Shown: in pieces, positions 1-43,069 of the stretch | How the letters are laid out: the number at the start of each line of letters is the position of its first letter | Numbering within the stretch: the first letter of the stretch is position 1 | Assembly (NCBI GenBank): GCA_002269645.1 | Contig: NIVC01001916.1 | Coordinates: 158,048 to 222,047, forward strand | DNA length: 64,000 nt | Reading direction: 5' to 3' | Origin: Macrostomum lignano | Lineage: Eukaryota | Notes under the pieces: generated by a model | Told to the model about the DNA's origin: nothing | Database searches by the model: none | What the model saw: the letters and a program-made list of their open reading frames with translations, nothing else | Translations under genes and position numbers: made by a program

Positions 1-13701
<13,701 letters not shown>

Positions 13702-14641
13702 TGCCTGGCTTGTTGCTGGGATGTCGCTAAGCGAGTCCGGTCATGAATTGATTATCTATTCGTTTTTAGTAATGCTACAAAAATGCAAAACTCATTAGCA
13801 GTCGCAAGATTTGAATAGCTTAATTGTATTAATTTGGGCGGACTAAATTGTAAAATATTTGTAAAAATCTAGGTAAAGTCTTTGAATATGTGACATTAGG
13901 TGTATATTTTGACAATTATATAAATACACAATATATAAATACATACATAATACACAAGTTATTTATATTGCCTATTGACTTTAGGTTTACATATATTTAT
14001 TTCTTAGGATATCATATATGTAAAGGTATTATATTTGTGAATGAAGAACTGCCAGCAAAATAAATTAAAGTCAACAAAATTTAAATATAAAAAGTGCTTA
14101 AGTTGAACTTAAATCAGAACTTTGACACTCAAAAAAACAGAAGCGGGTCGGAGCAATAAAAAATCTAAGCTTGTGTTTCTGGTAATCTTAGGTAAGTAAT
14201 ACAATGCAAAAACAGTATGATGGACATTGGTTTTAGGTTTAGGAACAGTGGGTTGTGATGCAATCGCCTCGCTTTTTGGCCAATGCCACACCAATTTGGC
14301 TAACAACTTTTTTCTCTATAATTTTATACTGAAAGCTTTATTTTTGTCTTAGAAATATTTCTGTCTCCACCACCTTTCAGTTGTTTCTACGGAATGAACC
14401 ATAATTATTGCTTAAAGAGCAAAATGAATTTAAAAATCACAGATGTAACGAATGTTAAATACTCGTAGCTGTGTACACAAAACAAATTGTTTTACTTATA
14501 ACACTTAGAAAAATGAATTATTGAGTTTATTGTGTTGGGTAATGCAAAAAATACGTCTTTGATATTCTAATGCTTTGTTATTTTTTAATTTTGCAATCTA
14601 TTTGTTGACTAATAATAATCCGGGTTTTTTAATGCTTACAT

Positions 14642-17600
14642 CACCCGACCAGCATGGATTTAATCGGTAGAAAAGGTAAACGTTTTCTACGATTAGATAG
14701 GGTAGATGGCATGTCGACTGCCAGCATAACATGCTTTCCTTCTGATTAAAAGCGGACTGTATATACTTGTATTGGGCAGTTATGGGCGCAATTCAAAAGC
14801 TACGCACAACCAATATTATAATGGCTCGACATATTTAATTAGTATAGGGCATTGTGTTAGTATGTATGAATTCAAGACCTAGACTAATAAAGCAGTTGTG
14901 TCTAGAGTCGAAAACTTTGGAAATGTGTCGCCCTAGCTTGCACAAAAAGCCATGTATGACATGACTGAATGAAATTTAATTAGGAGGTTAATGATTGTAA
15001 AATAAACTAGCTACTTGGACCTCTTGACAATGACAATAAGGATGAAATGGTCCTGTTGCAGGCAGATATTAATTGGCTTAAAAAAAGTAAAAGCTTGATG
15101 GCTAGCTAGCTAGGTGGCCTTGGCTCACCCAGTTATTGGCCTTATATTGGCCTTCTTATCAATATGTGGGCCATTTTGTATTGCATTCTGCTTTAATCTA
15201 CTTTGTTTTTCTTCTTTATTGCCAGGTATTTAGTATAATTTTTTAGCTCTTAGTTGTATTCTTTATTTTAATATCACTCTATACTTGTACCATGAAAAGA
15301 AACACAAAAGGCCTTGTCAATTTTAGGCCTATGATAGGTAGCTAGCTATGTTATTTTATTTTAGTAATAGGCCTATAGCTATTAAGAGTAGGCCTACTAA
15401 ATTATTAGTCTATAAAATGTATATGGTCTAAAATAGGCTAGCTATTTTAGACCCTATTATATTTTATGCTTCTTGTCTAACAATCTAATAATTGTTGTAG
15501 GCCAATATTATGAAATGTATAGGCCTAGCTATAGAAAAAGAAAAAGAAGCCAATAACCTTCCTAATGAATAAATTAATTAATATTAGTTCAGTTGTGTAT
15601 TTACTTTATATTTATTGTCATATGAATTATATACTTATATTGCATTTAGCCTAGGCCTATCTACTCTAGTCTGCCTATCCTCTACCTATGTCTGTTCTCT
15701 CAATCATTATATTTTTACTTTTTCCCTCTCTTAATTCCTTTATTATCATGCTTCTCAATTATCTCCCATCTTTGCCCCTCCCCAATTCCCTCCTATCCTG
15801 CCTATCCCCCAATTCCCTCCTATCCTGCCCACCCCCAATTCCCTCCTATCCTGCCCACCCCCAATTCCCTCCTATCCTGCCCACCCCCAATTCCTTCCTA
15901 TCCTGCCCATCCCCCAATTTCCGCCATCCTGCCCTTCAATCTTTTCACCCTTGGGTTTTAAGCTATAAACCCAAGGCAATTCAAAATCTAGAAATGGATT
16001 TCAAATTGGAAAATTGAATTCAGCATTTCAAGCACCTTTCAAAAAGGCGAAACTATAGAGCTAGAAAATATGGAACTATTTAACTACCTTAAGTTCAATA
16101 AGTTATAGTTGGATATTGCCAACTCTTTTCCAGGTGCCTCTATCTAGCTAATGCTAACAAAAATGTTGCAAGGTGTACTTTAATATTATATTTGTTCTAG
16201 TAAGCAGTTTTTCTGTGTCTCCCATTCTACCCCACCTTTCCCTCCCGTTCTACCCTTCCATTCCTTCCCATTCTACCCTCCATTCCCTCCCATTCTACCC
16301 CCACCATTCCCTCCCATTCTACCCTTCCATTCCCTCACATTCTACCCCCTCCATTCCCTCCCATTCTACCCTTCCATTCCTTCCCATTCTACCCTTCTAT
16401 TCCTTCCCATTCTACCCCTCCATTCCCTCACATTCTACCCCTCCATTCCCTCACATTCTACCCTTCCATTCCCTCCCATTCTACCCTTCCATTCCCTCAC
16501 ATTCTACCCCTCCATTCCCTCCCGTTCTACCCTTCCATTCCCTCCCGTTCTACCCTTCCATTCCCTCCCATTCTACCCTTCCATTCCCTCACATTCTACC
16601 CCCTCCATTCCCTCCCGTTCTACCCTTCCATTCCCTTCCCGTTCTACCCTTCCATTCCCTCCTATTCTCTATACCCTCCTTATACCCTCAATACTCTCCC
16701 TATACCCTCTATACCCTCCATATACCCTCCGTATACTCTCCATACCCTCCATATTTTTTCTATACCCATACATGGCCTCCTTGTACCCTCTATGCCTTCC
16801 ATATACCCTCAATACTCTCCCTATACCCTCCATACCCTTCTATACCCATTCTTACCCTCCATATACCCTCCATACCATCCCTATACCCTCCATACCATTC
16901 CTATACCCTCAATACCATCCCTATACCCTCCATACCATCCCTATACTCTCCTTATAACCTCTCCATACCCTCCATACCCTCCATACTTTTTCTATACCCA
17001 CCCATGGACTCCCTGTACCCTCTATGCCCTCCATATACCCTCCATACTCTCCCTATACCCTCCATACTCTCCCTATACCCTCCATACCCTTCTATACCCA
17101 TTCATACCCTCCATATACCCTCCATACCATCCCTATACTCTCCTTATAACCTCTCCATACCCTCCATACCCTCCATACTTTTTCTATACCCACCCATGGA
17201 CTCCCTGTACCCTCTATGCCCTCCCTATACTCTCCATACCCTCCTACTTTTCCTATCCTTCCCGCGTTATACTTTTCCCTATCCAGCCTCTACTATTCCC
17301 TCTTTCCACCTCCAGCGCCTCCCCCTCTCTAGCCCCTACCCTCTCTTCCTTTACTTTCCAGCCCCCATCCTCTACTCCCCTCCAGCGCCCACCCTCTTCT
17401 CCATCAGCCCCTACCCTCTCCTCCACTCCAGCGCCCTCCCTCTCCTCCACTCCAGCGCCCTCCCTCTCCTCCACTCCAGCGCCCTCCCTCTCCTCCACTC
17501 CAGCGCCCTCCCTCTCCTCCACTCCAGCGCCCTCCCTCTCCTCCACTCCAGCGCCCTCCCTCTCCTCCACTCCAGCGCCCTCCCTCTCCTCCACTCCAGC

Positions 17601-19069
17601 GCCCTCCCTCTCCTCCACTCCAGCGCCCTCCCTCTCCTCCACTCCAGCGCCCTCCCTCTCCTCCACTCCAGCGCCCTCCCTCTCCTCCACTCCAGCGCCC
17701 TCCCTCTCCTCCACTCCAGCGCCCTCCCTCTCTTCCACTCCAGCGCCCTCCCTCTCCTCCACTCCAGCGCCCTCCCTCTCCTCCACTCCAGCGCCCTCCC
17801 TCTCCTCCACTCCAGCGCCCTCCCTCTCCTCCACTCCAGCGCCCTCCCTCTCCTCCACTCCAGCGCCCTCCCTCTCTTCCACTCCAGCGCCCTCCCTCTC
17901 CTCCACTCCAGCGCCCTCCTCTCCTCCACTCCAGCGCCCTCCCTCTCCTCCACTCCAGCGCCCTCCCTCTCTTCCACTCCAGCGCCCTCCCTCTCCTCCA
18001 CTCCAGCGCCCTCCCTCTCCTCCACTCCAGCGCCCACCCTCTACTCTCCTTGGTTATCCCTTCGTTACGCTCTTCCCTCCTCTCTGTTTTACTTACTGTG
18101 TCATGCATAACCCGTCTGCTACAGTGTTTTTAAATAGCCTTTTATACCCTCCTCTTTCCCTAGCCCCTCCTCCCCCGGCGGCTCCCCTTCTCGTAGCTCT
18201 GCTAATAAAATCGTAATTCTTCTTCTCTTCAGAATAATTTGCCCAGCTGCGAACTGTGATGGTGCATACCGGGTACTCGCAATTTAAAAAGCGTATGCTT
18301 CTTACTGATTTACTGATTTAATTCCGACGCAACCAAGCAAATCGTTTACTTTCAAGTCCGTGCATTTTTCTTGTGTTTAACTTTTCACCGTTCGGCGTTA
18401 ATGCCGTGTGGCGTTGGTGTAATACTATCGCGAAATTCAATTTCCAATGTCATTATCTAACTATTGTCGCTTTTCTGTATTACAACTATATACAATACTT
18501 CTGCATTTATTGACGTAACATTGTGCCAATAATGTCACATTGTGTGGCCTCAATATGAATCTGTTGCTGAATGCAACTTATAGCCCATTGACCAGTTTAA
18601 TCGCTTGAAATACATTGTAATGTAATACTGTATCGCTTTTGGCAATCGAAACGAGACTTTAGCCAGACTCCTCACTGATCCAAATGCTCCTCAAGCAAAG
18701 GTACGAGTATATGGAAAGCAGACTGAGCTCCGCAGACTTAGTATATTTGATCTTCGGATCGCGGATAGAACCAAGGAAATCTTGGTACGTAAATAAAATT
18801 GGAGTCACTTTTCCTACTTCCACTTTCCCTGCTCTTTCCCTGACCACAGTCTGTGCCCCAGGCTCAAGTTAGACCAACGCAAAATACTAACCTGAATAGG
18901 AAGCAAGCAACTCACTTCCCACTCTAGTCTTTTTCTGCCACTGTTGTCTTGCAATACTCGCAAAGATCTCGTATGGCGTCCTATTTGAATTGGCGCGTCT
19001 CGTTGTTAACGTAGTCGAAAGCAATACTGGTGCCAATTATTTGTGTCGATCAAGTTTCCTAGAGAATGA
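14642..19069 (+). repeat. Left terminal inverted repeat arm
   Basis: AT-rich outer part, pyrimidine-rich minisatellites at ~15750-18170 (including the 24-bp unit CTCCACTCCAGCGCCCTCCCTCTC), unique inner part. Confidence 0.95.
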
Positions 19070-19559
19070 TTTGTTGATAACTGTATATTCGCTGTCTTAG
19101 AGCTGCACGCTGTGTTTAACCATTACTTTGTCGTAGAGGAGCTGATGAAGGGAGGCGTTGGGGCGGACCTTTTGGAGGGGCGGAGCTGATGGGGGGCGGT
19201 AGCGGCGGAGCTTTTGGAGGGGCGGAGCTGATGGGGGCGGTAGCGGCGGAGCTTTTGGAGGGGCGGAGCTGATGGGGGCGGTAGGAGCGGAGCTGATGGG
19301 GGGCGGTAGGGGCGGAGCTGATGGAGGTGGATCGAAGGGGCGGAGTTGATGGAGGATGGTTTTTCTATTTATTCGACCGATTGAAGTATACACAACGTGT
19401 ACGTGTATTCGAGCTACGCTGGTAGTGTAGTTGTTTGTCTAGTATAGTTTATACATGTGTATACTGTAATGTACATGTAGTCTCACAATCTCATCAAAAG
19501 CTAGACATTTTATTTCTTTGGTTAGTAATCGTGGGGATATTAGATCCACATGCAGCTAT

Positions 19560-20680
19560 CGTCATTCGGTGAAGTTATGAACCCAGTCCAGCTCGACCCA
19601 GTTGCACAGATTCTCAATTGGATTGCCAGTCCATGGTGCGGATGTTGTTCTCAGCAAGCTTCGGATCGTTGTCCTGCTGAAACTGGCAGCGCATCTACAG
19701 CCTCTGTCCATGATGCCCTCAATGCGAGTTATTGGCCCAGGTCCAGCTCTGGAGAATGCAGCCCACACCATGACATTGCCATCTACATGCTTCATGGAAC
19801 CAACGGGGCACCTGGAATCGAATTCCTCACCAGCTCGGTGGCGCACATACCGGCGACCATCAGAACCAGTGCGGGAAAATTTGCTCTCATCACTCCAGAT
19901 GACCTTGGCCCCAGTCCTGGGGTGTAGAGCTTGCATGTTGCTTCGCCCAGTTCAAGCGCCGCTTCCGGTTTTTGTCGGAGATGAATGGCTTCTTCCTAGC
20001 AATGCGGCCATGCAGTCCGGCAGCTACCAGACGGCGGCGGACAGTCATGGGGTGCAGCTGGACACCAAAAGTTTACGGCTGATGTCCACAGCGGTTAGCC
20101 GACGGTTGGACTCGGGCATTCGCACAATTCGTCGATCCAGTCGGTGGTCAGTTTTCGGTGCCCTGCCAGGTCTTGAGCCACAGTCTGTTTTGCCAGTGCT
20201 GCTGTGGCGCCTGAGTGCTTGCTGGACGCACGTTTTCTGCGTACGTGACTTTGGCACGCTGGGAAACTCCTTGGTCGAACAGGGCCCTGATTTTCCTACA
20301 CGATTCAGGCGATAGAGCTTTGCCTTTCCCATTCTAGGAGAGTTCGAGATCATTTTTGCTTGGAGTTGTATTGAACTTGATGTTTTGGACTTTGGAATCA
20401 GCAGGGGCCCCACTGTTGTAGCACCTACCTTTTAGCCCAATTAATTAAGTGGTCTTATTACTGTGTGACTTATCAAATTCGATTGTGAGATAAGGACTTC
20501 AATTAAACAGACTCAATTGTGAGTAATTACACAACACATAACTATAATTTTACTGATTGATACCACGGTTATCTATAACTGATTAGATTAAATGCTTCCG
20601 CAATCTGTGAAGGTTATGAAACTATAAAAGTTCGAATTTGTGTTAGGTGGTCTTAATTCATTGTGCGCCACTTTATGTAT
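19560..20680 (-). pseudogene. Degraded Tc1/mariner (DD34E-type) transposase and probable 5' end
   Basis: Broken frames encode RPGRAPKTDHRLDRRIVR..RRLTAVDI (HTH), KVIWSDESKF, GNVMVWAAFS, FQQDNDPK and NPIENL; candidate TIR near 20648-20678 has an inner direct repeat GTGGTCTTA near 20450. Confidence 0.88.
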
Positions 20681-20874
20681 AATGTTGCTGAGTACTTTCA
20701 AGGCTCAATCCAATTACATGTACCATGTCGGAGAGGCCGTCTAAATATGGCTAAAATTACACACTAAAAATAAAGCCTGAGAATTTGCATTTACATTGAG
20801 ATAAGTAGTAGACCTTGGAACTGGTTAACAGGCCTCAAAACGAGGCAAGTGTTTTAAATTGAAACTAAACTGAT

Positions 20875-21133
20875 TGATGGGTTTCGACCTTCGGGCTCCT
20901 TGTTAGGGAAGCCTTCGGGCCTCAGGCTCAGAAATAAATCAATTAGAGACCTGGCCCCCCACTCCTGTCAGATGGTCAGCCCCATGGTAACTTGATCGTG
21001 TGGCGAGCAGTCTAGGTCCTATAGCTAAGAGAGGGACAGCGAGAGACGAGCAGGGAGAATTTTGAAAGTAGAAATTAGCTAATCCGCAGATCAACTAACT
21101 TGCTGCCACCAGCCCGTGCGCCCTGGCTCACCA
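20875..21133 (+). repeat. ~260-bp repeat, inverted partner at 23039-23293
   Basis: Diverged reverse-complement match, e.g. ACTCCTGTCAGATGGTCAGCCCC and GGTCCTATAGCTAAG. Confidence 0.85.
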
Positions 21134-22149
21134 CACCGGGACTCTCGAAATCGGGCTTCCGACTAGAAGGGGCTTTGCACTTACCTGCCAACTAGTGTCT
21201 TTTTGCTGTCAATCTCGAAGTCATAGCCGATGATAAGGGACACTGCTGGGACTAGATCGCGTTGGCCATGCAGGTACAGAGGGGACTTGTGCAGGGGATT
21301 CTTGCGGTGGCGAGTCTATGGGGTAGCTACATGTACTATTACATTGCTAAATACGAAGATATGTACTTTTAGCCTTCAACGCGCCAACTAGCCTCTCATA
21401 GCGCTGATGATAGGCTAACTCGAACCTCAGAGACCGCATGATTCATTTACCCGAGCCGCTTGGCTACCCTAGAGTGCACAAAGTACATCTCTGGCGCCGA
21501 TTCTGCACTTTTGGCAGTTTTGCTCACTGATTTGTTAGATTGGTCGACTGAGAACTGCCTTGCCATTGGTCCACTGTGACCGGCGCCTACTAGCTTAGCT
21601 ACTCATCTGAGCCATCGGCGAACAAAGAAATAAAGCCGACAAAGATAACTGTTAGATTTAACCTTCTCCTTAATTCACTTCACACTTTAGATTGAATTGG
21701 AGTCTTAGACTACTGCTGGCAGTATTATTGAATGATTCCTGCCTCAGCAACAGCACTACTGAACAAAATGAGCAAAAGTGTGCGCCTAATTCAGCTACTG
21801 CAACAGGGGACAGAAAAGGGATCACCCAATCAAGCAAGTCTAGGTAGCCTCTCACCCAACCAATCAGAAACTCAACAGCCGGAGACCAGGTATTCCACAG
21901 TGACCGAATCGGCTCGATGCTCTGCAGCTGTAGACTCGGGATGATGCTGTCACAATCTTCGCTGTTAGCTAGCAGGTGATGCTCTTAACTGGATGTTCGC
22001 TGCTGTCGACCGGGGGACTCGTTCTTGATGATGATGGGGGAAGTTGCAATCCGGGGATCAAGAAACGACGGTCGTGCTCCGGGAACCAGAAGTTGCGCGC
22101 TGGGCCCGAGCCAAAGTAAGAAGAAGTAGTGTCCGAGCGGGCCAAAAAC

Positions 22150-22295
22150 TCCGGTTTAAATAGCCGCCAACTGGACCGTAGTTTGTTATAACGGAACACG
22201 TCGATTCTGATTGGCTGAGCCGTTTTGTTAAAATGAGCGCCGAATTTTCTGATTGGCTAAGCTCGTTGCTACCCAGAATCACGTGACCGAGAGAT
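22150..22295 (-). promoter_or_regulatory. Promoter-like cluster inside the foldback spacer
   Basis: E-box CACGTG, two CCAAT boxes (CTGATTGG on +) and TATTTAAA on the minus strand, ahead of a GC-rich tract. Motif-level inference only. Confidence 0.35.
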
Positions 22296-23329
22296 CCTAT
22301 CAGTTCCCACAGGGTCGTAAAAAGATGACAGGTGCGGCCATAAATCACTCAAAATCGCAACAAAATGATTTATGATTTTTCGCGTAGGATTGACAGAAAT
22401 TAATGAAAAAATATACATTAGAAAGCTCTTATTAAATAGAAAGTGAAGATAATGAAGAGAAATCGCTAATCCCAAGGTACTTTTAGGGGTAAAACGCATA
22501 GCTGTCAAAGCTGTCACACGCTTGAGTGAATCCGAACAATAGGCTTTGACCTCATAAATCTTGATGGCCTGTCAAAATGATGAGAAAAAAGCTACCGCCC
22601 GCATCCTCTCAGACCATCTGGCGCCCGCTTCAACACTGAGTGAGGCGCAGGTGGCTGTCAGATCAGCTTCGAAAGCGATGATTTATGACCCAAAAAGCTG
22701 CGCCTGAGTTATTATGACTACTAGTATGGCCAGACATTATATCTAGTATAGATTCTATGACAATTTGCAGAAAAAAGATAAAAATGCCCCTTGCCCACTG
22801 TTAGTAGGCTAGTAAGTTTCGAGCCCATGTGCTAGCGCGGGATTTGGGAAAAAGTGCGTCCTCATCATGATACTGAAATTGAGCATGAAAAAGCTCATTG
22901 AGCATCATTTTCTCTATAATGCAGCTGCTATCTCACGGGAGCTGCAAACACAGCTTTTAAATTGGGCTGAGTAGCTGATTGGGCCGCCTTGTTTCCACGG
23001 CGCCTCCGGTGTGCAGGGAATACAGGTAGCTGCATGGTTTGGTGAGCCGGGGCGCACGGACTGGTGGCAGCGGGTTAGTTAATCCGCGGGTTAGCTAATC
23101 TCTACCTTTCAAATTCTCCCTGCTTGTCTCTCGACTCGCTGTCTTCCCTTAGCTATAGGACCTTGCTGCTCGCCACACAATCCAGCTACCACGGGGCTGA
23201 CCATCTGACAGGAGTGAGAAGCCAGAGTTCTAAGTGATTCATTTCTGAGTTCTGAGGCCCAGAGCTACAGGCTTAAAAAGGCCGAACCCATCAGAATGTT
23301 GCGGAGCTGCGTCATGCCATTGAAAACGC

Positions 23330-26300
23330 TCATTCTCTAGGAAACTTGATCGACACAAATAATTGGCACCAGTATTGCTTTCGACTACGTTAACAACGAG
23401 ACGCGCCAATTCAAATAGGACGCCATACGAGATCTTTGCGAGTATTGCAAGACAACAGTGGCAGAAAAAGACTAGAGTGGGAAGTGAGTTGCTTGCTTCC
23501 TATTCAGGTTAGTATTTTGCGTTGGTCTAACTTGAGCCTGGGGCACAGACTGTGGTCAGGGAAAGAGCAGGGAAAGTGGAAGTAGGAAAAGTGACTCCAA
23601 TTTTATTTACGTACCAAGATTTCCTTGGTTCTATCCGCGATCCGAAGATCAAATATACTAAGTCTGCGGAGCTCAGTCTGCTTTCCATATACTCGTACCT
23701 TTGCTTGAGGAGCATTTGGATCAGTGAGGAGTCTGGCTAAAGTCTCGTTTCGATTGCCAAAAGCGATACAGTATTACATTACAATGTATTTCAAGCGATT
23801 AAACTGGTCAATGGGCTATAAGTTGCATTCAGCAACAGATTCATATTGAGGCCACACAATGTGACATTATTGGCACAATGTTACGTCAATAAATGCAGAA
23901 GTATTGTATATAGTTGTAATACAGAAAAGCGACAATAGTTAGATAATGACATTGGAAATTGAATTTCGCGATAGTATTACACCAACGCCACACGGCATTA
24001 ACGCCGAACGGTGAAAAGTTAAACACAAGAAAAATGCACGGACTTGAAAGTAAACGATTTGCTTGGTTGCGTCGGAATTAAATCAGTAAATCAGTAAGAA
24101 GCATACGCTTTTTAAATTGCGAGTACCCGGTATGCACCATCACAGTTCGCAGCTGGGCAAATTATTCTGAAGAGAAGAAGAATTACGATTTTATTAGCAG
24201 AGCTACGAGAAGGGGAGCCGCCGGGGGAGGAGGGGCTAGGGAAAGAGGAGGGTATAAAAGGCTATTTAAAAACACTGTAGCAGACGGGTTATGCATGACA
24301 CAGTAAGTAAAACAGAGAGGAGGGAAGAGCGTAACGAAGGGATAACCAAGGAGAGTAGAGGGTGGGCGCTGGAGTGGAGGAGAGGGAGGGCGCTGGAGTG
24401 GAGGAGAGGGAGGGCGCTGGAGTGGAAGAGAGGGAGGGCGCTGGAGTGGAGGAGAGGGAGGGCGCTGGAGTGGAGGAGAGGGAGGGCGCTGGAGTGGAGG
24501 AGAGGGAGGGCGCTGGAGTGGAGGAGAGGGAGGGCGCTGGAGTGGAGGAGAGGGAGGGCGCTGGAGTGGAAGAGAGGGAGGGCGCTGGAGTGGAGGAGAG
24601 GGAGGGCGCTGGAGTGGAGGAGAGGGAGGGCGCTGGAGTGGAGGAGAGGGAGGGCGCTGGAGTGGAGGAGAGGGAGGGCGCTGGAGTGGAGGAGAGGGAG
24701 GGCGCTGGAGTGGAGGAGAGGGAGGGCGCTGGAGTGGAGGAGAGGGAGGGCGCTGGAGTGGAGGAGAGGGAGGGCGCTGGAGTGGAGGAGAGGGAGGGCG
24801 CTGGAGTGGAGGAGAGGGAGGGCGCTGGAGTGGAGGAGAGGGAGGGCGCTGGAGTGGAGGAGAGGGAGGGCGCTGGAGTGGAGGAGAGGGAGGGCGCTGG
24901 AGTGGAGGAGAGGGAGGGCGCTGGAGTGGAGGAGAGGGAGGGCGCTGGAGTGGAGGAGAGGGTAGGGGCTGATGGGAGAAGAGGGTGGGCGCTGGAGGGG
25001 AGTAGAGGATGGGGGCTGGAAAGTAAAGGAAGAGAGGGTAGGGGCTAGAGAGGGGGAGGCGCTGGAGGTGGAAAGAGGGAATAGTAGAGGCTGGATAGGG
25101 AAAAGTATAACGCGGGAAGGATAGGAAAAGTAGGAGGGTATGGAGAGTATAGGGAGGGCATAGAGGGTACAGGGAGTCCATGGGTGGGTATAGAAAAAGT
25201 ATGGAGGGTATGGAGGGTATGGAGAGGTTATAAGGAGAGTATAGGGATGGTATGGAGGGTATATGGAGGGTATGAATGGGTATAGAAGGGTATGGAGGGT
25301 ATAGGGAGAGTATGGAGGGTATAGGGAGAGTATGGAGGGTATATGGAGGGCATAGAGGGTACAGGGAGTCCATGGGTGGGTATAGAAAAAGTATGGAGGG
25401 TATGGAGGGTATGGAGAGGTTATAAGGAGAGTATAGGGATGGTATGGAGGGTATAGGGATGGTATTGAGGGTATAGGAATGGTATGGAGGGTATAGGGAT
25501 GGTATGGAGGGTATATGGAGGGTAAGAATGGGTATAGAAGGGTATGGAGGGTATAGGGAGAGTATTGAGGGTATATGGAAGGCATAGAGGGTACAAGGAG
25601 GCCATGTATGGGTATAGAAAAAATATGGAGGGTATGGAGAGTATACGGAGGGTATATGGAGGGTATAGAGGGTATAGGGAGAGTATTGAGGGTATAAGGA
25701 GGGTATAGAGAATAGGAGGGAATGGAAGGGTAGAACGGGAAGGGAATGGAAGGGTAGAACGGGAGGGAATGGAGGGGGTAGAATGTGAGGGAATGGAAGG
25801 GTAGAATGGGAGGGAATGGAAGGGTAGAACGGGAGGGAATGGAAGGGTAGAACGGGAGGGAATGGAGGGGGTAGAATGTGAGGGAATGGAAGGGTAGAAT
25901 GGGAGGGAATGGAAGGGTAGAATGGGAGGGAATGGAGGGGGTAGAATGTGAGGGAATGGAGGGGTAGAATGGGAAGGAATAGAAGGGTAGAATGGGAAGG
26001 AATGGAAGGGTAGAATGGGAGGGAATGGAGGGGTAGAATGGGAGGGAATGGAAGGGTAGAATGGGAGGGAATGGTGGGGGTAGAATGGGAGGGAATGGAG
26101 GGGTAGAATGGGAAGGAATGGAAGGGTAGAACGGGAGGGAAAGGTGGGGTAGAATGGGAGACACAGAAAAACTGCTTACTAGAACAAATATAATATTAAA
26201 GTACACCTTGCAACATTTTTGTTAGCATTAGCTAGATAGAGGCACCTGGAAAAGAGTTGGCAATATCCAACTATAACTTATTGAACTTAAGGTAGTTAAA

Positions 26301-27745
26301 TAGTTCCATATTTTCTAGCTCTATAGTTTCGCCTTTTTGAAAGGTGCTTGAAATGCTGAATTCAATTTTCCAATTTGAAATCCATTTCTAGATTTTGAAT
26401 TGCCTTGGGTTTATAGCTTAAAACCCAAGGGTGAAAAGATTGAAGGGCAGGATGGCGGAAATTGGGGGATGGGCAGGATAGGAAGGAATTGGGGGGTGGG
26501 CAGGATAGGAGGGAATTGGGGGTGGGCAGGATAGGAGGGAATTGGGGGTGGGCAGGATAGGAGGGAATTGGGGGATAGGCAGGATAGGAGGGAATTGGGG
26601 AGGGGCAAAGATGGGAGATAATTGAGAAGCATGATATAAAGGAATTAAGAGAGGGAAAAAGTAAAAATATAATGATTGAGAGAACAGACATAGGTAGAGG
26701 ATAGGCAGACTAGAGTAGATAGGCCTAGGCTAAATGCAATATAAGTATATAATTCATATGACAATAAATATAAAGTAAATACACAACTGAACTAATATTA
26801 ATTAATTTATTCATTAGGAAGGTTATTGGCTTCTTTTTCTTTTTCTATAGCTAGGCCTATACATTTCATAATATTGGCCTACAACAATTATTAGATTGTT
26901 AGACAAGAAGCATAAAATATAATAGGGTCTAAAATAGCTAGCCTATTTTAGACCATATACATTTTATAGACTAATAATTTAGTAGGCCTAGCCTACTCTT
27001 AATAGCTATAGGCCTATTACTAAAATAAAATAACATAGCTAGCTACCTATCATAGGCCTAAAATTGACAAGGCCTTTTGTGTTTCTTTTCATGGTACAAG
27101 TATAGAGTGATATTAAAATAAAGAATACAACTAAGAGCTAAAAAATTATACTAAATACCTGGCAATAAAGAAGAAAAACAAAGTAGATTAAAGCAGAATG
27201 CAATACAAAATGGCCCACATATTGATAAGAAGGCCAATATAAGGCCAATAACTGGGTGAGCCAAGGCCACCTAGCTAGCTAGCCATCAAGCTTTTACTTT
27301 TTTTAAGCCAATTAATATCTGCCTGCAACAGGACCATTTCATCCTTATTGTCATTGTCAAGAGGTCCAAGTAGCTAGTTTATTTTACAATCATTAACCTC
27401 CTAATTAAATTTCATTCAGTCATGTCATACATGGCTTTTTGTGCAAGCTAGGGCGACACATTTCCAAAGTTTTCGACTCTAGACACAAACTGCTTTATTA
27501 GTCTAGGTCTTGAATTCATACATACTAACACAATGCCCTATACTAATTAAATATGTCGAGCCATTATAATATTGGTTGTGCGTAGGCTTTTGAATTGCGC
27601 GCCATAACTGCCCAATACAAGTATATACAGTCCGCTTTTAATCAGAAGGAAAGCATGTTATGCTGGCAGTCGACATGCCATCTACCCTATCTAATCGTAG
27701 AAAACGTTTACCTTTTCTACCGATTAAATCCATGCTGGTCGGGTG
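23330..27745 (-). repeat. Right terminal inverted repeat arm
   Basis: Reverse complement of 14642-19069; differs mainly in repeat-unit counts and small indels; mirrored ORFs (18684-18872 vs 23527-23715) translate identically. Confidence 0.95.
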
Positions 27746-28692
27746 GCTTACATATAACGCTAGCATTTTATTTCAGTTTATGATCGACAGCTTTTAGGTA
27801 AATTTTTACTTCTAAATGTTTAACTCTAGGATTTTACTGTAAGAAATTTATTAAGGAGGAAATAAAACAAAATATTATGACCTTATTGTTTGCCTTGTCC
27901 TGTACTTTTGTTAGCTTGAGTATTTGCATGCAATTTTAAACTCTCTCTTTTCTAAGAAAGCATAAGATAATTATCCGCGTGTTACTTCCGCTATATTTAT
28001 TGAATCAGGTGGCTATCTTATAAATACCAATAGTTTCTTGATTATAATAGGTATAAAAATGACTGCTGTTATAAAAACATTCAATAGTTTTACCATTAAA
28101 CTGTGATTAACTAAATATTTTTAAGTTAAGTTATACATCAGCTGATGGTTTTTTTTCTTGAAAGTTACTTCTTTGAGTTATTAAAAGCTTTTCCTCTTTG
28201 AGGATAGGCTTTTTGAAATTTTCTGAAAATGCTATGCTCCTAAGCGATTAATTCATTAAAGCAGATTTATTTTATAGCAAAGTAGTAATAGTATATCTTG
28301 GAAGAGTTGAAAATAAAAATATAAAAAAACTAGAAGATCCATGTTTTTTTTAGATTCAGTGCTTTTAACTTTTAGTATAAATTTATCTAGTTTTATCTTG
28401 TATATTCTAACTTTTCGCTCAATGATAGACCCTAAATGTAATAATTTTTGCTAAATTAACTATAGTGTCTATATATGAGCAAATTATGCCTTATACTTTA
28501 TGAATACTCTTGAAGCTTACATTACGAGTATATGATCTACTACCCTACTGTAAATAATAAAAATATCTTGCAATAAATTATAAACATAATATACGTTTTT
28601 ATGGTTCATGAATTTTTATTTCAACTTTGATAATTTAATGACACAATTGGCAATTGAAAATATTGCTGTTATTTCTGACTGATAAAAGAAAA

Positions 28693-31600
28693 ATGCCGGG
28701 ATCAAAGAAGCCAAGATCGGTTCGGCTGCTCACAGATCTGGCCGAACAGCTCGATCGACAGTTTGAAGGCGAAACGGCATTGCAGGAGCTCGCTGATTTT
28801 CTTCAGAGCCGCGAGATCCGCGCCGCTGTGGCCGCTCACGAGACTCTCAGACGGATGGAGAAACAGAAACGAAAACTCGGCCGTGGCATCGAGAAGAGCG
28901 CCTTCCCAGAGGCGGCGGGCACGGACTTTATTCAGGCCCTCCGGTCCGCTCTGGACACCCTCGAACCTGCGGCCGCCGGGTCCAACGACGACGCCTGCGA
29001 GCTGTACGACCTGCTGGCGTCCGCTCGGATGAACATCTTTGTGGACGCTCTGGAGGACATCGGACATCGAAATTATAAGGTTTGCCCGATACTCTGCTCC
29101 GTTTGCAGCATTCTTCATCCCTACAGACTTCCTCATCCTCCCATAGCAACAGAATTCATCAACCCTAGCAGCAGGCTTTCTCACCCCTAGAAACAGACTC
29201 CTCATCCCCTCATCCCTTGCAACAGACTTCGTCACCCCCTAGCAACAGACTTCCTCACCTCCTAGCAACAGACTTCCTCATCCCCTCATCCCTAGCAACA
29301 GGCTCCGTCACCCCCTAGCAACAGACTTCCTCACCCCTTAGCAACAGACTCCTCACCCTGAGCCGGCTTCCTCGCCCCTAGCAACAGACCAAATGTCCCA
29401 TCGTCAGGGCGAGCCGCCCCTAGGCCGAGTCTCCAGCCACGATCTGGTCGAGTGCAACGTTGATGAAAGCGAGCAGATGGCGGGCGGGAACCACAGCCTC
29501 CTCCGAGGCGCTGGCGCTCTGTCCGCCAGTCTGGGCGGCGGCTCCGAGCTGATTGGGCAGCCGCCGGACGGTCAGGATTGGCGCGGGTCGCGCGAAGACG
29601 ATTTAGACGAGTTTGGCCGGCCACAGAAGATGATCGCCTTTAGCAAGGTGAGAGGGCAGAGGTGCGAGTGTGGCGCCCCATCTGATGAAATGGCGCCCCT
29701 CAAATAAAAATGGCGCCCCTAGTCAATGAAATGGCGCCCCTACTCAATGAAATGGCGTCCCTACTCAATGAAATGGCGCACCTACTCAATGAAATGGTGC
29801 CCCTACTCAATGAAATGGCGCCCCTACTCAATGAAATGGCGCCCCTACTCAATGAAATGGCGCCCCTACTCCATGAAATGGCGTCCCTACTCAATGAAAT
29901 GGCGCCCCTACTCCATGAAATGGCGTCCCTACTCAATGAAATGGCGCCCCTACTCCATGAAATGGCACCCCTACTTAATGAAATGGCGCCTCTTTGATAA
30001 AACGGCGTCCCTCTGATAAAATGGCGCTCCCAAAATGCTATGCCTTCGATACAACGAATAACAATGAGTGTTGGCCCATACAGTATCGGCTCGGACAAGT
30101 CACTCCACCAGCTTAGGAATCGAACTCATGACCTAAGTCGCCACTGACCATTCCAGGCGCCAGGAGAGGACCTGGGCATCACTGTGGGGACAATCGAATG
30201 GTACGATGAGAACACGGGCCAGAGCGGTCTGGACATTGTGGTAGAGCGCATCATGGCCGGGTCCAGGATCGACCAGCAGAACACCCTGAAGCCCTATGAC
30301 GTCATCAGGGAAGTGAACGGCATCCCGATTGACTCACCAGAGAAGCTGCAACAGGTGATGCGGAAAGCCAGCGGAAATATCACCTTGAAGGTGCGGTCTG
30401 GATTCTACGAAAGCTCCAAGCCTGTACAGGTAATTACGAGTATAATTTACTTTTTTTACTACTGACGAGTAGAACGTATTGAATATTATTAATAGTAGTT
30501 ACAGGAGGGCTGGTTTGACTTTCTAATCGTCAGGCATGCAAACTCTGTGCCTTGGGTGTACGTTGGCCCCTTGTTAAGTTGGCACGTTAATTGCACGAGC
30601 AGAGCCAAGCCGAGATTCCAATTTAGCCCCAAATTGATGTGACTGCACTTGGAATCGAGCCTGGGACGCTGGTACATCAGAGCGCCGCGCCTGACCACTG
30701 GGCTACGGTCCCCCTATGCTGTAATTGCTCCTTAATATCCTCTAATTACTTACTTAATGACAATAAACATTTATTTCATACTCTCTACTCATAGTATCTA
30801 ATCTGAACAGTATCTAATTAATTATAACATACGAGTATTGGTACTTCAACCGTTAATTCTAACCCATGCAATTCCAGGAAGCATTCGTAAGTCTATTATG
30901 TCAGTTGTTGATTTTTTATTCTATAACTTTTTTAAGCACAAAATTATTTCACTACTCTGCAATTGTTCTTTCATTGATCGTTATGCACTACTATAAGCAT
31001 GATTTTTAGTAGTCTGTTGCGAATCTGCCATCTGGAATTTAAAATTACCAGTAGAAGATATTTTATTTAGTAGAAAAATCCAATCTGAAAAAAAATACTG
31101 TTCCAGAAATATCTTGCCTGTGGCACTAAATGTGGCGCTAAATCGGCGCTCATTTGGTGCTAATGTGGCGCTAAATCGGCGTTCAATTGGCGCTAAATCT
31201 GCGCTAAATCGGCGTTCAATTGCCGCTAAATCGGCGCTAAATCGGTGCTAAATCGGCGCTCATATGGCGCTAAACCGGTGCTTATGTGGCGCTAAATCGG
31301 CGCTCATGTGGCGCTAAACCCATGCTCATGTGGCGCTAAATCGGAACTAAACTGGCGCTAAATTGAAGCTAAAGTAAATTTGACAGAAATAAACAAGCAT
31401 TTGATAAAAATCAAAAATAATCTTTCCTAAAAAAACCCTACAGACCTACGTGAAGGCGCTGTTCTCCTACGACCCTCAATACGACGGCCTGCTCCCGTGT
31501 CGCGAGGCTGGCCTGAAGTTCACCGTTGGCGACGTGCTGCAAGTGCTGTCGCAGGAGGACCCGAACTGGTGGCAGGCGCGGCTGTGGAGCAGCCAGGGCA

Positions 31601-34600
31601 GAGCCGGCCTCATCCCCTCCCTGACTCTGCAGGAGCGGCGGGTTGCCTTCGTCCAGTCAGCCCCGGATAAGGACGCCATCAACTACAAGGTGGGAGACGT
31701 GCTGTGTGGGGCTGTGTCCCAAGCTGTGTGGGGCTGTGTCCCAAGCTGTATGGGGCTGTGTCCCAAGCTGCATTGGGCTGTGTCCCAAGCTGTGTGGGGC
31801 TGTGTCCCAAGCTGCATTGGGCTGTGTCCCAAGCTGTGTGGGGCTGTGTCCCAAGCTGTGTGGGGCTGTGTCCCAAGCTGCATTGGGCTGTGTCCCAAGC
31901 TGTGTGGGGCTGTGTCCCAAGCTGCATTGGGCTGTGTCCCAAGCTGTGTGGGGCTGTGTCCCAAGCTGTGTGGGGCTGTGTCCCAAGCTGTGTGGGGCTG
32001 TGTCCCAAGCTGTGTGGGGCTGTGTCCCAAGCTGTGTGGGGGCTGTGTCCCAAGCTGTGTGGGGCTGTGTCCCAAACTGTGTGGGGCTGTGTCCCAAGCT
32101 GTGTGGGGCTGTGTCCCAAGCTGTATGGGGCTGTGTCCCAAGCTGCATTGGGCTGTGTCCCAAGCTGTGTGGGGCTGTGTCCCAAGCTGCATTGGGCTGT
32201 GTCCCAAGCTGTGTGGGGCTGTGTCCCAAACTGTGTGGGGCTGTGTCCCAAGCTGTGTGGGGCTGTGTCCCAAGCTGTGTGGGGCAGTGTCCCAAGCTGC
32301 ATTGGGCTGTGTCCCAAGCTGTGTGGGAGCTGTGTCCCAAGCTGTATGGGGCTGTGTCCCAAGCTGTGTGGGGCTGTGTCCCAAGCTGTGTGGGGCTGTG
32401 TCCCAAGCTGTGTGGGGCTGTGTCTCGAGCTGCTGTATGGGGGCCGTGTCCCAAACTGATATATTGGGGCCAGCACCAGGGGCGCCAGCACCAGGGGCGC
32501 CAGCACCAGGGGTGCCAGCACCAGGGGCGCCAGCACCAGGGGCGCCAGCACCAGGGGCGCCAGCACCAGGGGCGCCAGCACCAGGGGCGCCGGCACCAGG
32601 GGCGCCAGCACCAGGGGCGCCAGCACCAGGGGCGCCAGCACCAGGGGCGCCAGCACCAGGGGCGCCAGCACCAGGGGCGCCAGCACCAGGGGCGCCAGCA
32701 CCAGGGGCGCCAGCACCAGGGGCGCCAGCACCAGGGGCGCCAGCACCAGGGGCGCCAGCACCAGGGGCGCCAGCACCAGGGGCGCCAGCACCAGGGGCGC
32801 CAGCACCAGGGGCGCCAGCACCAGGGGCGCCAGCACCAGGGGCGCCAGCACCAGGGGCGCCAGCACCAGGGGCTATTCTGCTCTAATTCGTTTGGAGAAG
32901 ACGGAGTAAAAAAGTAAATAAGTAGAACACACATGTCGCACTCTGACAGGTCATGGGTCTCGGACTTACCAGCAAGAAAAGAAAAGTCAAAATGTCCTAC
33001 AAGGCCAAGTTGTCGCAAACGTACGAGAAGTCGGACCTGACCATCTACCAGGAAGTGGCTCGGGTGCCGCCATTTAAGCGGTCTCTTGTGCTGTTGCTGG
33101 GCGCTCCAGGGATTGGCAAATACTCGCTTATTGATCAGCTGATCAGGTAAGGTTGTCAGCACTCTTTCAATTTTCACAAATCGGCACTGATTGGTCAGCT
33201 GTAGCCTCGCACCACCCCACTCCTCGCTGATTGGCCAGCGGTAGCCTCACACCCACCCCACTCCTCGCTGATTGGCCATCTGTAGCCTTGCACACACCCC
33301 ACTCCGCGCTGATTGGCCAGCTGTAGCCTCACACCTACCCCACTCCTCGCTGATTGGCCAGCTGTAGACTCACACCCACCCCACTTCTCGCTGATTGGCC
33401 AGCTGTAGCCCTGCACCCACCCCACTCCGCGCTGGTTGGCCAGCTGTAGCCTCATACCCACCCCACTCCGCGCTGATTAGCCAGCTGTAGCCTTACACCC
33501 CACTCCGCGCAATTTTATACACCTGTCAGACAGAGACCGGAAGAGTTCGCCAGGCCAATTCCGCACACCAGCCGACCTCAGAGAGACGGAGAGTTGAACG
33601 GCGAGAAATACCTGTTCGCTGGGCAGTCCGAAATGGAGGTGGACATTCGGCGTGGCGGCTACCTGGAACACGGACAGCTCAATGGCCACCTGTATGGGAT
33701 TAAGATGGACACGCTGAGGTCAATGGCTAAGCAGGTGAGGACAACAGAGCAGAAAGTCAAAGTGCCGCTGTGCACCCTGTGTGAGCGTGTGTATGAGTGT
33801 GCGTGCCTGCGGACAGTGTTGGTGCGGTTGTATGTGGAGTCAGCGGAATGGCAAGGTGTTGCACCAGGGTGCCCACAGCGGATATTATGAGTAATTTTTT
33901 TTATAACCCCGCAGGACCGAACCCTAATCCTCGACTGCGCCCCAGAAAAGGCCCGGCTGGTGTGCACAGCGGAGTTCAAACCCTACGTTGTGTTCGTGGC
34001 AGCCCCGAGCTTCGAGTGCATGAAGTCAATGTACGAGCTGGGCTCGTCTCTCGGACTCACGCGAAAGCTGAAGCGGGTGAGCTCGTTATTTACGAGCTGA
34101 GTTTATAGATGAACGTGCAATCTGACGAGTTCCTAGGATTTTGACTGTGATTTTTTTTCGATTGGGGATTTGAAATTGTTATTGAGATTTGTGTATTTTG
34201 AAAAATAGATTTTTTATTTTAATTTGGGATGTCTGGCTTTTGGTTTGGGATTTTTTAAGATTTTAAGTTGGCATTTTTTAAGATTTTGAGTGGGGATTTT
34301 AGTTTTTTGATTTGGAATTTTGGGATCATGATTTGGGATTTGTGGGATTTTGATTTGGGATTTTGATTTGTGATTTTTTTGGAATTTTAATTTTGGATTT
34401 TCGGGAATTCGATTTGGGATTGTTGGAAATTTTGGTTTGGGATTTTTTGGGATTTTGATTTGGGATTTAGGGATTTTGATTTGGGGTTCTTGAAGTTTAA
34501 TTTTTGGCTTTTTGCCTTTTTATTATGGATTTTCAGGCTAAAGACTTAAGTGGTTCTACGTGCTAAAGAGAAAAAATATGATTGTTCGAACCGAATTCCC

Positions 34601-40226: not shown

Positions 40227-40322
40227 GGCCCGCCGCTAGCGGAGCCCATCCCACGCTAAAAATAGCCCGTTAACGGGACCCAGCCCACGGTGGGATGGGC
40301 TCCCTTAGCGGGGGCCAGCCCA
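40227..40322. mobile_element. ~95-bp palindromic MITE-like repeat; second, inverted copy at ~49959-50054
   Basis: Internal inverted arms GCTAGCGGAGCCCATCCCAC / GTGGGATGGGCTCCCTTAGC; no TSD recognised. Confidence 0.6.
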
Positions 40323-43045: not shown

Positions 43046-43069
43046 AACCCTAACCCTAACCCTAACCCT
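43046..43069 (-). repeat. Interstitial telomeric repeat (TTAGGG)4
   Basis: (AACCCT)x4 on the + strand. Confidence 0.85.

What the first reader, a model, noticed from the sequence alone, without database searches (positions are those of the whole stretch)
14634..27753. 13.1-kb foldback element with 4.4-kb terminal inverted repeats and an 8-bp TSD
Seen: termini CACCCGACCAGCATGG.. and ..CCATGCTGGTCGGGTG are flanked by a perfect GCTTACAT duplication. The arms (4428 and 4416 bp) are near-identical, are internally modular with several minisatellites, and enclose a 4.26-kb spacer. Known: TIRs of most cut-and-paste elements are tens to hundreds of bp; multi-kb repeat-laden TIRs occur in Drosophila FB and Galileo. 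8-bp TSDs fit hAT, P or Merlin, but CACCCG ends match none of their usual consensus that I recall. No matching transposase is inside. Inference: a recently active, possibly unclassified family of giant non-autonomous foldback elements able to carry cargo.
Basis: partly seen in the sequence, partly recalled or inferred. Interest (0 to 1): 0.85.

Follow-up and report, generated by a model that had tools for sequence, protein, structure and literature searches.

The report
Foldback-type transposon in a flatworm genome
A 13.1-kb piece of mobile DNA with two almost identical 4.4-kb inverted arms sits between two genes of the flatworm Macrostomum lignano. It is a real insertion of the long-known "foldback" type with no working transposase of its own, so it is a large, clean specimen rather than a new kind of element.

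Summary
The element spans 14642-27745. Its ends, CACCCGACCAGCATGG and the reverse complement, abut a perfect 8-bp direct repeat (GCTTACAT). The arms are 4428 and 4416 bp and enclose a 4260-bp middle segment. Over 4403 aligned positions they differ by 5 substitutions, all inside minisatellites, plus short slippage-type indels. The window is from Macrostomum lignano or a very close relative.

The best reading is a non-autonomous foldback-type cut-and-paste DNA transposon, inserted between the 5' ends of a TRPM-like gene and an MPP-like MAGUK gene.

- Tandem repeats cover 37% of the window outside the element and 42% of the arms, so repeat-laden arms are a property of this genome.
- The middle segment holds a decayed Tc1/mariner copy that cannot account for an 8-bp duplication, and no other recognisable gene.
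- Only one copy could be examined, so "family", "recently active" and "unclassified" remain untested.

The superfamily is unresolved. Mutator/Phantom fits best. The hAT terminal motif is not met. P and Zisupton are not excluded.

Verdict: new member of a known kind, moderate interest.

The parts
14634..14641 (.). Left copy of the 8-bp target-site duplication, GCTTACAT
   Evidence: identical to 27746-27753
14642..19069 (+). Left arm (4428 bp) of the terminal inverted repeat
   Evidence: 4403 positions align with the right arm, with 5 substitutions
14642..14657 (+). Terminal motif CACCCGACCAGCATGG. Inferred to be the transposase recognition and cleavage end.
   Evidence: found only at the two ends of the element in 64 kb
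14658..14698 (+). Subterminal imperfect hairpin, ATTTAATCGGTAGAAAA..TTTTCTACGATTAGAT
   Evidence: DNA fold of the first 119 nt, z = -3.4; 81% self-complementary over 42 nt
14642..15772 (+). Outer domain: non-repetitive and AT-rich (33% GC, CpG o/e 0.35)
   Evidence: no ORF longer than 44 aa apart from one that runs into the first minisatellite
15324..15659 (.). Cluster of five copies of the palindromic 8-mer TAGGCCTA, mirrored at 26720-27060 in the right arm
   Evidence: 10 hits in the window, all in the arms, 0.75 expected. Function unknown.
15773..15934 (+). Minisatellite, 26-bp unit x 6.2
16219..16668 (+). Minisatellite, 23-bp unit x 19.4
16439..17244 (+). Minisatellite, 20-bp unit with 192/232-bp higher-order periods
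17357..18046 (+). Minisatellite, 24-bp unit x 28.9. The right arm has 27.9 copies.
18047..19069 (+). Inner domain of the arm: non-repetitive, with no ORF over 62 aa
19070..23329 (.). Middle segment (4260 bp). It is not inverted-repeated and has no intact gene.
   Evidence: across all six frames the only Pfam hit is the Tc1 HTH domain
19135..19355 (+). G-rich minisatellite (17/24/41-bp periods) at the left edge of the middle segment
19550..20690 (-). Decayed Tc1/mariner copy. The HTH and DDE pieces are split across reading frames. The 5' end is of the IR/DR type (inverted repeat containing direct repeats). The 3' inverted repeat is missing.
20917..21137 (.). Left copy of a discrete inner inverted pair of about 220 bp (partner 23036-23260, 83.7% identical)
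23036..23260 (.). Right copy of the inner inverted pair
23330..27745 (-). Right arm (4416 bp), a mirror image of the left arm with the same module order
27746..27753 (.). Right copy of the 8-bp target-site duplication, GCTTACAT

Best explanation

Shown:
- Two inverted ends terminate precisely at a perfect 8-bp duplication of the target.
- The element sits in the roughly 2.5 kb between the 5' ends of two divergently oriented host genes.
- It encodes no usable transposase.

Inferred:
- A transposase encoded elsewhere in the genome recognised the CACCCGACC... ends, excised the element and joined it to a target cut with an 8-bp stagger. Repair of that stagger produced GCTTACAT on both sides.
- Among superfamilies with this duplication length, Mutator-like elements (MULEs) of the Phantom group are the most likely source (my estimate about 0.35-0.4). 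Most foldback elements fall there, that group makes 8-10 bp duplications, and it occurs in flatworms.
- P (about 0.15), hAT (about 0.15, since its terminal motif is not met) and Zisupton or unknown (the remainder) are not excluded.
- The 4.4-kb arms are probably a secondary, recent product: an inverted duplication of one end region, or continued gene conversion between the arms. They have no substitutions in non-repetitive sequence, whereas the cargo between them is old and decayed.
- The minisatellites in the arms most likely reflect this genome's general tendency to form such arrays, not arrays of transposase-binding sites. They start 1.1 kb from the ends and are as frequent in the surrounding DNA.
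For: - Precise ends and 8-bp TSD. The chance of such a repeat is about 1.5e-5 to 5e-5 (arithmetic).
- The flanks are different, gene-bearing sequence. On the left is a TRPM-like N-terminal exon at 12684-13217 on the minus strand, which aligns to residues 36-124 of Nematostella TRPM2. On the right is the L27 exon of an MPP-type MAGUK at 28654-29190 on the plus strand.
- Arms: 4403 aligned positions with 5 substitutions, all in minisatellites.
- No coding capacity apart from a decayed Tc1 remnant.
- The arms lack inner copies of the terminal motif, so they are not complete elements in themselves.
- Tandem repeats cover 36.7% of the window outside the element and 42% of the arms.
- Host identity: 99% identity to UniRef100_A0A1I8GZR0 of M. 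lignano.
- Literature: most foldback elements belong to Mutator, and Tetris has the same domain order (flanking, tandem-repeat, inner) with 8-10 bp TSDs (PMC4079207). Muta1 makes 8- or 9-bp TSDs and is a foldback-type MULE (PMC5225508). [quoted passage not shown] Phantom occurs in Platyhelminthes with 8-10 bp TSDs (PMC6446971). Galileo lengthens its TIRs by recruiting internal sequence (PMC3573991).
Against: - Only one copy is available. No other copy, empty site or autonomous partner could be examined.
- No superfamily-specific terminal consensus was matched.
- In well-studied foldback MULEs (Muta1, FB) the tandem repeats begin right next to the terminal motif and bind the transposase. Here the first 1.13 kb is non-repetitive.
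- A 13-kb element with near-perfect 4.4-kb arms should be prone to hairpin or cruciform formation and deletion, so its persistence is itself unexplained.
- The read-level correctness of the assembly could not be checked.
Confidence: 0.75

Rival explanations
1. A shorter, asymmetric transposon inserted here, and the 4.4-kb arms formed afterwards at this locus. One end region would have been copied in inverted orientation, by fold-back or template-switch repair or by gene conversion. On this reading the giant inverted repeat was never itself mobilised.
For: - No substitutions in about 2.5 kb of non-repetitive arm sequence, whereas the middle segment carries a heavily decayed Tc1 copy and an inner inverted pair only 83.7% identical.
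- TIR lengthening by recruitment of internal sequence is documented for Galileo (PMC3573991).
Against: - No direct evidence favours this over the main reading. Both predict the same sequence at this single locus.
- The arm/middle-segment junctions show no informative microhomology (read directly).
Confidence: 0.15
2. Assembly artefact: a chimeric fold-back long read (for example a PacBio read with an undetected adapter) produced a false palindrome.
For: - Published M. lignano assemblies rest on PacBio continuous long reads and are described as difficult and redundant (PMC5730564).
- The single-base homopolymer differences between the arms look like residual consensus errors.
Against: - A fold-back read gives a palindrome with no spacer, or only an adapter, and mirrored flanks. 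Here there is a 4260-bp non-palindromic centre.
- The two flanks are different gene-bearing sequences of 14 kb and 36 kb.
- The arms end precisely at an 8-bp direct repeat.
- The arms differ in minisatellite copy number and carry variant repeat units, so they were assembled independently.
Confidence: 0.04
3. Composite element: two inverted copies of a complete 4.4-kb transposon bracket a captured 4.3-kb genomic segment and moved as one unit using only their outer ends.
For: The architecture (repeat, unique DNA, inverted repeat) resembles composite transposons. The middle segment is a mosaic of unrelated sequence.
Against: The terminal 16-mer, even with 3 mismatches, occurs only at the two outer ends, and the 29-mer likewise. 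Each arm therefore has only one transposon end and is not a complete element.
Confidence: 0.03
4. Not a mobile element: a local inverted segmental duplication whose flanking 8-bp repeat arose by chance.
For: - This genome is full of repeats and holds other inverted repeat pairs nearby, such as 33187-33501 / 35923-36201.
- No other copy of the arms is in the window.
Against: - An 8-bp perfect direct repeat placed exactly at both ends of the inverted repeat has probability about 1.5e-5 to 5e-5.
- No source copy of the duplicated 4.4 kb lies nearby.
- Inverted duplications do not produce direct repeats of the flanking DNA.
Confidence: 0.02

Closest known systems
Tetris, a foldback transposon of Drosophila virilis (PMC4079207)
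   Same: - Non-autonomous, with no ORF.
- The long TIRs have the same order of domains: an outer non-repetitive flanking domain (up to 866 bp in Tetris, 1131 bp here), then tandem repeats, then an inner domain.
- A variable middle segment.
- TSDs of 8-10 bp.
- Superfamily assigned only by TSD length.
   Different: - Tetris TIRs reach 1.7 kb and carry one ~220-bp repeat type. Here the arms are 4.4 kb with four unrelated minisatellite blocks.
- Different phylum, and no sequence relationship was tested.
Mutator-like foldback elements: Drosophila FB, Muta1/Phantom, Tm1 of Meloidogyne (PMC5225508, PMC5499845, PMC6446971, PMC3169594)
   Same: - Long composite TIRs.
- TSDs of 8-10 bp (Muta1 8 or 9; Tm1 mostly 9).
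- Many non-autonomous derivatives with heterogeneous middles.
- Phantom is recorded in Platyhelminthes.
   Different: - In Muta1 the tandem repeats of the TIR start immediately after a 10-bp terminal motif and enhance transposase binding. Here they start 1.1 kb inside.
- Muta1 TIRs are 145 bp.
- No MULE transposase is present, so homology cannot be tested.
Galileo (P superfamily, Drosophila) (PMC3573991)
   Same: - A foldback-like element with internally repetitive TIRs.
- The longest TIRs are found in non-autonomous copies.
- TIRs grow by tandem-repeat expansion and by recruitment of internal sequence.
   Different: - Galileo makes 7-bp TSDs and its TIRs reach only about 1.26 kb.
- It encodes a THAP-domain transposase, and none is present here.
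TU elements of the sea urchin Strongylocentrotus purpuratus (Liebermann et al. 1983; Hoffman-Liebermann et al. 1985). Recalled from memory; the papers could not be opened.
   Same: Modular foldback transposons in a non-insect invertebrate. They have long inverted repeats with outer and inner domains, and middle segments made of unrelated dispersed repeats. As I recall, the target duplication is 8 bp.
   Different: Their outer domain consists of short tandem repeats that start at the ends. There is no sequence comparison, and the 8-bp figure is unverified here.
hAT superfamily
   Same: 8-bp TSD. The central TA of GCTTACAT resembles the NTNTANAN-type target consensus listed for hAT families (PMC3014272).
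   Different: - The hAT terminal motif YARNG is not met: CACCC fails at positions 3 and 5.
- hAT TIRs are typically 11-16 bp.
- No hAT transposase is present.

Membership tests
Foldback-type (FB-like) DNA transposons, a structural class | Very long terminal inverted repeats that make up most of the element | tested here: met
   The arms total 8844 of 13104 bp (67%).
Foldback-type (FB-like) DNA transposons, a structural class | TIRs that are internally modular and contain tandem repeats | tested here: met
   Four minisatellite blocks cover 42% of each arm. Caveat: the surrounding genome is 36.7% tandem repeat, so this feature does not discriminate here.
Foldback-type (FB-like) DNA transposons, a structural class | Target-site duplication showing transposition (8-10 bp in FB-like families) | tested here: met
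   Perfect 8-bp GCTTACAT on both sides. Range taken from PMC4079207 and PMC3169594.
Foldback-type (FB-like) DNA transposons, a structural class | Dispersed multi-copy family with variable middle segments | not testable with these tools
   No second copy lies in the window. The host genome is absent from the DNA and contig collections, and arm ORFs have no protein hits.
Mutator-like (MULE) / Phantom superfamily | MULE DDE transposase in autonomous copies | not testable with these tools
   None is found in the element, and autonomous copies cannot be searched.
Mutator-like (MULE) / Phantom superfamily | TSD of 8-11 bp, usually 9 | tested here: met
   8 bp. Muta1 gives 8 or 9 bp (PMC5225508). Phantom gives 8-10 bp and occurs in Platyhelminthes (PMC6446971).
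Mutator-like (MULE) / Phantom superfamily | Long TIRs (>100 bp), in foldback-type members with subterminal tandem repeats next to the terminal motif | tested here: inconclusive
   The TIRs are long (met). However, the first 1131 bp are non-repetitive, and no subterminal tandem repeat adjoins the terminus.
hAT superfamily | 8-bp TSD | tested here: met
   PMC3014272
hAT superfamily | Terminal motif 5'-YARNG | tested here: not met
   The terminus is CACCC: position 3 is C rather than R, and position 5 is C rather than G (consensus from PMC3014272).
P superfamily (P, Galileo, 1360) | THAP-domain transposase; TSD of 7 bp (Galileo) or 8 bp (P element, from memory) | tested here: inconclusive
   No transposase is present. 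An 8-bp TSD is compatible with the P element but not with Galileo's 7 bp (PMC3573991).
CACTA/Mirage/Chapaev/Transib group | CA..TG (often CAC..GTG) termini with 2-5 bp TSDs | tested here: not met
   The termini CAC...GTG fit, but the TSD is 8 bp (PMC12730594).
Tc1/mariner, as the mobilising system of the whole element | TA target duplication and Tc1-type ends | tested here: not met
   The flanks are ..ACAT|CACC and GGTG|GCTT, with no TA duplication. The Tc1 remnant inside is decayed cargo.
Zisupton / KDZ | 8-bp TSD and a KDZ transposase | tested here: inconclusive
   The TSD length fits (PMC12730594). No transposase or terminal consensus is available to test.

The most novel reading that the evidence does not exclude
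The element represents an unclassified, currently active lineage of giant foldback transposons in flatworms, defined by CAC...GTG ends combined with an 8-bp duplication. Its multi-kb arms would be regenerated or homogenised at each round of transposition by hairpin-templated synthesis, and it could shuttle several kb of unrelated DNA between gene promoters.
Probability: 0.1. Interest if true: 0.65.

Novelty: new member of a known kind. Interest (0 to 1): 0.35.

Why it matters
- If more copies and an autonomous partner exist, this would be the first foldback-type DNA transposon characterised in Macrostomum lignano. Published transposon work held in the searched library concerns LTR retrotransposons.
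- M. lignano is a flatworm with established stable transgenesis (PMC8717057). An endogenous active cut-and-paste system there could become a genetic tool.
- A near-perfect 4.4-kb palindrome between two promoters is also a potential source of double-stranded RNA, of replication trouble and of rearrangements.
- It is a good case for asking how very long inverted arms are kept identical.
- For genome annotation, it shows that in this genome minisatellite content alone should not be read as a transposon feature.

Tried and rejected
Searches for other copies or relatives (all negative):
- Other copies in the window: BLAST of the element against the rest found only weak low-complexity matches. The terminal 29-, 16- and 12-mers were found nowhere else above chance.
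- Public DNA: the 22-mer terminus had 0 hits in metagenome contigs (the first two tries failed) and 0 in viral contigs.
- A control 28-mer from a host exon also had 0 hits, so the metagenome null is uninformative.
- Protein route to other copies: a concatenation of arm ORFs found no homologue. Contig look-ups for a window ORF and for the M. lignano protein P0001 were empty.

Host identification:
- Two word-index protein searches with host exons found nothing.
- The full HMMER scan succeeded.

Coding capacity and RNA genes:
- Pfam on all six frames of the middle segment gave only the Tc1 HTH domain.
- The arms contain no ORFs apart from minisatellite translations.
- Rfam and tRNA scans of the whole window found nothing.

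Ideas rejected:
- Composite-transposon idea: rejected because the arms have no inner ends.
- The inner 220-bp inverted pair as a remnant of once-longer arms: the alignment shows no homology between the pair and the arm boundary, so this is left open, not adopted.
- Minisatellites as transposase-binding arrays: judged unlikely.

Literature that could not be opened: the TU-element papers, the Galileo PNAS paper and the first M. lignano genome paper.

Full report
OBSERVATION

- GCTTACAT lies at 14634-14641 and again at 27746-27753.
- Between these copies the element runs from 14642 (CACCCGACCAGCATGG...) to 27745 (...CCATGCTGGTCGGGTG).
- The terminal 29-mer occurs only at these two places in the 64-kb window, in inverted orientation, with none expected by chance.
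- The bases just outside the two ends (T and G) are not complementary, so the inverted repeat stops exactly where the direct repeat begins.
- A global alignment of the left arm (14642-19069, 4428 bp) with the reverse complement of the right arm (23330-27745, 4416 bp) pairs 4403 positions.
- The arms differ by 5 substitutions, all inside minisatellite arrays. There are also ten single-base length differences in short C or T runs, one TAGGC duplication and one 23-bp repeat unit.
- About 2.5 kb of each arm lies outside tandem arrays (arithmetic), and it has no substitutions.
- The middle segment is 4260 bp.
- A perfect 8-bp direct repeat at precisely these two positions has a chance probability of about 1.5e-5, or about 5e-5 allowing for the AT-rich flanks (my arithmetic).

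ANATOMY

Reading inward from its end, each arm has these parts:
- A 1131-bp non-repetitive, AT-rich outer domain (33% GC).
- Within it, an imperfect subterminal hairpin at 14658-14698.
- Also within it, a cluster of five copies of the palindromic octamer TAGGCCTA. All ten occurrences in the window lie in the two arms, against 0.75 expected.
- Four minisatellite blocks with 26-, 23-, 20- and 24-bp units. All are C-rich on the strand that reads inward from the terminus.
- A 1023-bp non-repetitive inner domain.

Outside the minisatellite translations no arm ORF exceeds 62 aa.

The middle segment contains:
- A G-rich minisatellite at 19135-19355.
- A decayed Tc1/mariner copy on the minus strand, about 19550-20690. 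It gives an HTH_Tnp_Tc3_2 hit at E = 4e-15. Its DDE motifs are visible but split between reading frames. Its 5' end is of the IR/DR type (an inverted repeat that contains direct repeats). Its 3' inverted repeat is missing.
- A discrete inner inverted pair of about 220 bp, 20917-21137 / 23036-23260, 83.7% identical.
- Nothing else recognisable in any of the six frames.

Rfam and tRNA scans of the whole window are empty.

CONTEXT

- A host exon at 60601-61239 is 99% identical to UniRef100_A0A1I8GZR0 of Macrostomum lignano. The window therefore comes from this flatworm or a very close relative.
- The element lies between the 5' ends of two divergently oriented genes.
- To the left is a TRPM-like channel on the minus strand. 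Its exon at 12684-13217 aligns to residues 36-124 of Nematostella TRPM2.
- To the right is an MPP-type MAGUK on the plus strand. Its L27 exon starts near 28.7 kb.
- Without the element the two coding starts would be about 2.5 kb apart.
- Tandem repeats cover 36.7% of the window outside the element and 42% of the arms.
- The published genome description also stresses an unusually high load of simple and tandem repeats (PMC5730564).
- The repeat-laden look of the arms is therefore the norm for this genome and not a hallmark of the element.

WHAT IT IS

Precise inverted ends plus a target duplication are the signature of integration by a DDE-type transposase that makes staggered cuts. With no usable transposase inside, the element is non-autonomous.

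Its layout is that of foldback-type elements: very long modular TIRs making up 67% of the length, and a heterogeneous non-coding middle.

The closest described architecture is Tetris of Drosophila virilis. Tetris has the same order of domains (flanking, tandem-repeat, inner), no ORF and 8-10 bp duplications (PMC4079207).

Alternatives considered:
- Composite of two complete elements: rejected, because neither arm has an inner copy of the terminal motif.
- Fold-back assembly chimera: very unlikely. There is a 4.26-kb non-palindromic centre, the two flanks are different gene-bearing sequences, there is a target duplication, and the arms differ in repeat copy number.
- Chance inverted duplication: excluded by the target duplication.

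WHICH SUPERFAMILY

This cannot be settled from one non-autonomous copy. I tested what could be tested.
- hAT: 8-bp duplication met, but the YARNG terminal motif is not met, since the terminus reads CACCC (PMC3014272).
- CACTA/Transib-type group: CAC..GTG ends met, but its 2-5 bp duplication is not (PMC12730594).
- Tc1/mariner: no TA duplication.
- Galileo: 7-bp duplication, not met (PMC3573991).
- Mutator-like/Phantom: the 8-10 bp duplication and long TIRs are met. Muta1 makes 8- or 9-bp duplications. The group occurs in Platyhelminthes. Most foldback elements are assigned to it. However, the subterminal tandem repeats that adjoin the terminus in Muta1 are absent here.
- The P element proper (8 bp, from memory) and Zisupton (8 bp) remain possible.

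I therefore rank MULE/Phantom first, at roughly 0.35-0.4, and leave the question open.

HOW IT LIKELY WORKS

Shown:
- The element was integrated with an 8-bp staggered target cut.

Inferred:
- A transposase supplied in trans recognises the terminal CACCCGACC... motif, and perhaps the subterminal hairpin. It excises the element and re-inserts it. If the enzyme is MULE- or hAT-like, excision would proceed through hairpins on the flanking DNA, as shown for Muta1 (PMC5499845).
- The arms carry no substitutions in non-repetitive sequence, whereas the cargo is old: a frameshifted, truncated Tc1 copy and an inner pair only 84% identical. Two explanations fit. The long arms may have been made recently, by inverted duplication of one end region. 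TIR growth by recruitment of internal sequence is documented in Galileo. Alternatively, the arms may be kept identical by gene conversion within the element.
- One copy cannot distinguish these explanations. It also cannot show whether the arms already existed when the element last moved; that alternative is the main rival, at 0.15.
- For the same reason arm identity does not date the insertion. 'Recently active' is plausible, given the intact duplication, but it is not demonstrated.

WHAT COULD NOT BE DONE

- No other copy, empty site or autonomous partner could be retrieved.
- The terminus is absent from the metagenome and viral collections. A host-exon control is equally absent, so these nulls say nothing.
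- M. lignano contigs are not in the contig index.
- Arm ORFs have no protein matches.
- Repbase and Dfam are not available here.
- In the held literature I found no description of foldback or other DNA-transposon families in M. lignano. Work there has focused on LTR retrotransposons.

VERDICT

This is a genuine, well-preserved, unusually long-armed foldback-type non-autonomous DNA transposon in Macrostomum. It is a new member of a known structural kind, with its superfamily unresolved.

It is worth a genome-wide follow-up, because M. lignano is a transgenic model and because 4.4-kb near-perfect arms exceed those I could cite for Galileo (up to 1.26 kb) and Tetris (up to 1.7 kb). It is not categorically new.

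Interest is 0.35. The most novel reading not excluded is an active, unclassified lineage whose arms are regenerated during transposition; I put its probability at about 0.1.

Noticed in passing
window 19550-20690 (minus strand): Decayed Tc1/mariner copy inside the middle segment. It has an HTH_Tnp_Tc3_2 domain, DDE motifs split over two frames, a 5' end of the IR/DR type (direct repeats at 20445-20467 and 20643-20665), and no 3' inverted repeat.
   Followed up: partly
window 20917-21137 and 23036-23260: Discrete ~220-bp inverted pair, 83.7% identical, inside the middle segment. It has no clean target duplication and no continuity with the main arms. It may be two copies of a short dispersed repeat or an older inner palindrome.
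   Followed up: partly
window 33187-33501 and 35923-36201: A second inverted pair in the window: arrays of a 41-bp minisatellite (containing a CCAAT/ATTGG motif) in opposite orientation, 2.4 kb apart, within an intron of the MAGUK gene. The arrays are 86-93% alike and I saw no clean target duplication. This may be a degenerate foldback structure.
   Followed up: partly
window 40220-40322 and 49959-50060: Two copies (90% identical) of a ~100-bp, GC-rich, internally self-complementary sequence that looks like a small MITE. They bracket the region holding the 3.2-kb minisatellite.
   Followed up: no
whole window; largest array 46421-49632: Tandem repeats cover 35% of the 64 kb (36.7% outside the element). 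Nearly every intron carries a minisatellite with a 11-49 bp unit. One array of 20-bp units is 3.2 kb long.
   Followed up: yes
window 43046-43071: Short interstitial telomere-type repeat, (AACCCT) x 4.3.
   Followed up: no
window 15324-15659 and 26720-27060: The palindromic octamer TAGGCCTA occurs five times in each arm and nowhere else in the window (0.75 expected). It lies within a weakly self-complementary stretch, 15336-15559. It may be a protein-binding site or a degenerate nested palindrome.
   Followed up: partly
window 54573-55976 (minus strand): A 467-aa uninterrupted ORF that looks like a membrane protein. It has no Pfam family and no homologue in the word-indexed protein search.
   Followed up: partly
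window 57899-61242 (plus strand): TRP-like channel gene. The segment 60601-61239 is 99% identical to a 190-aa M. lignano UniRef entry that its source names 'Piezo_RRas_bdg domain-containing protein'. That name appears to be a mis-annotation of a fragmentary gene model.
   Followed up: partly
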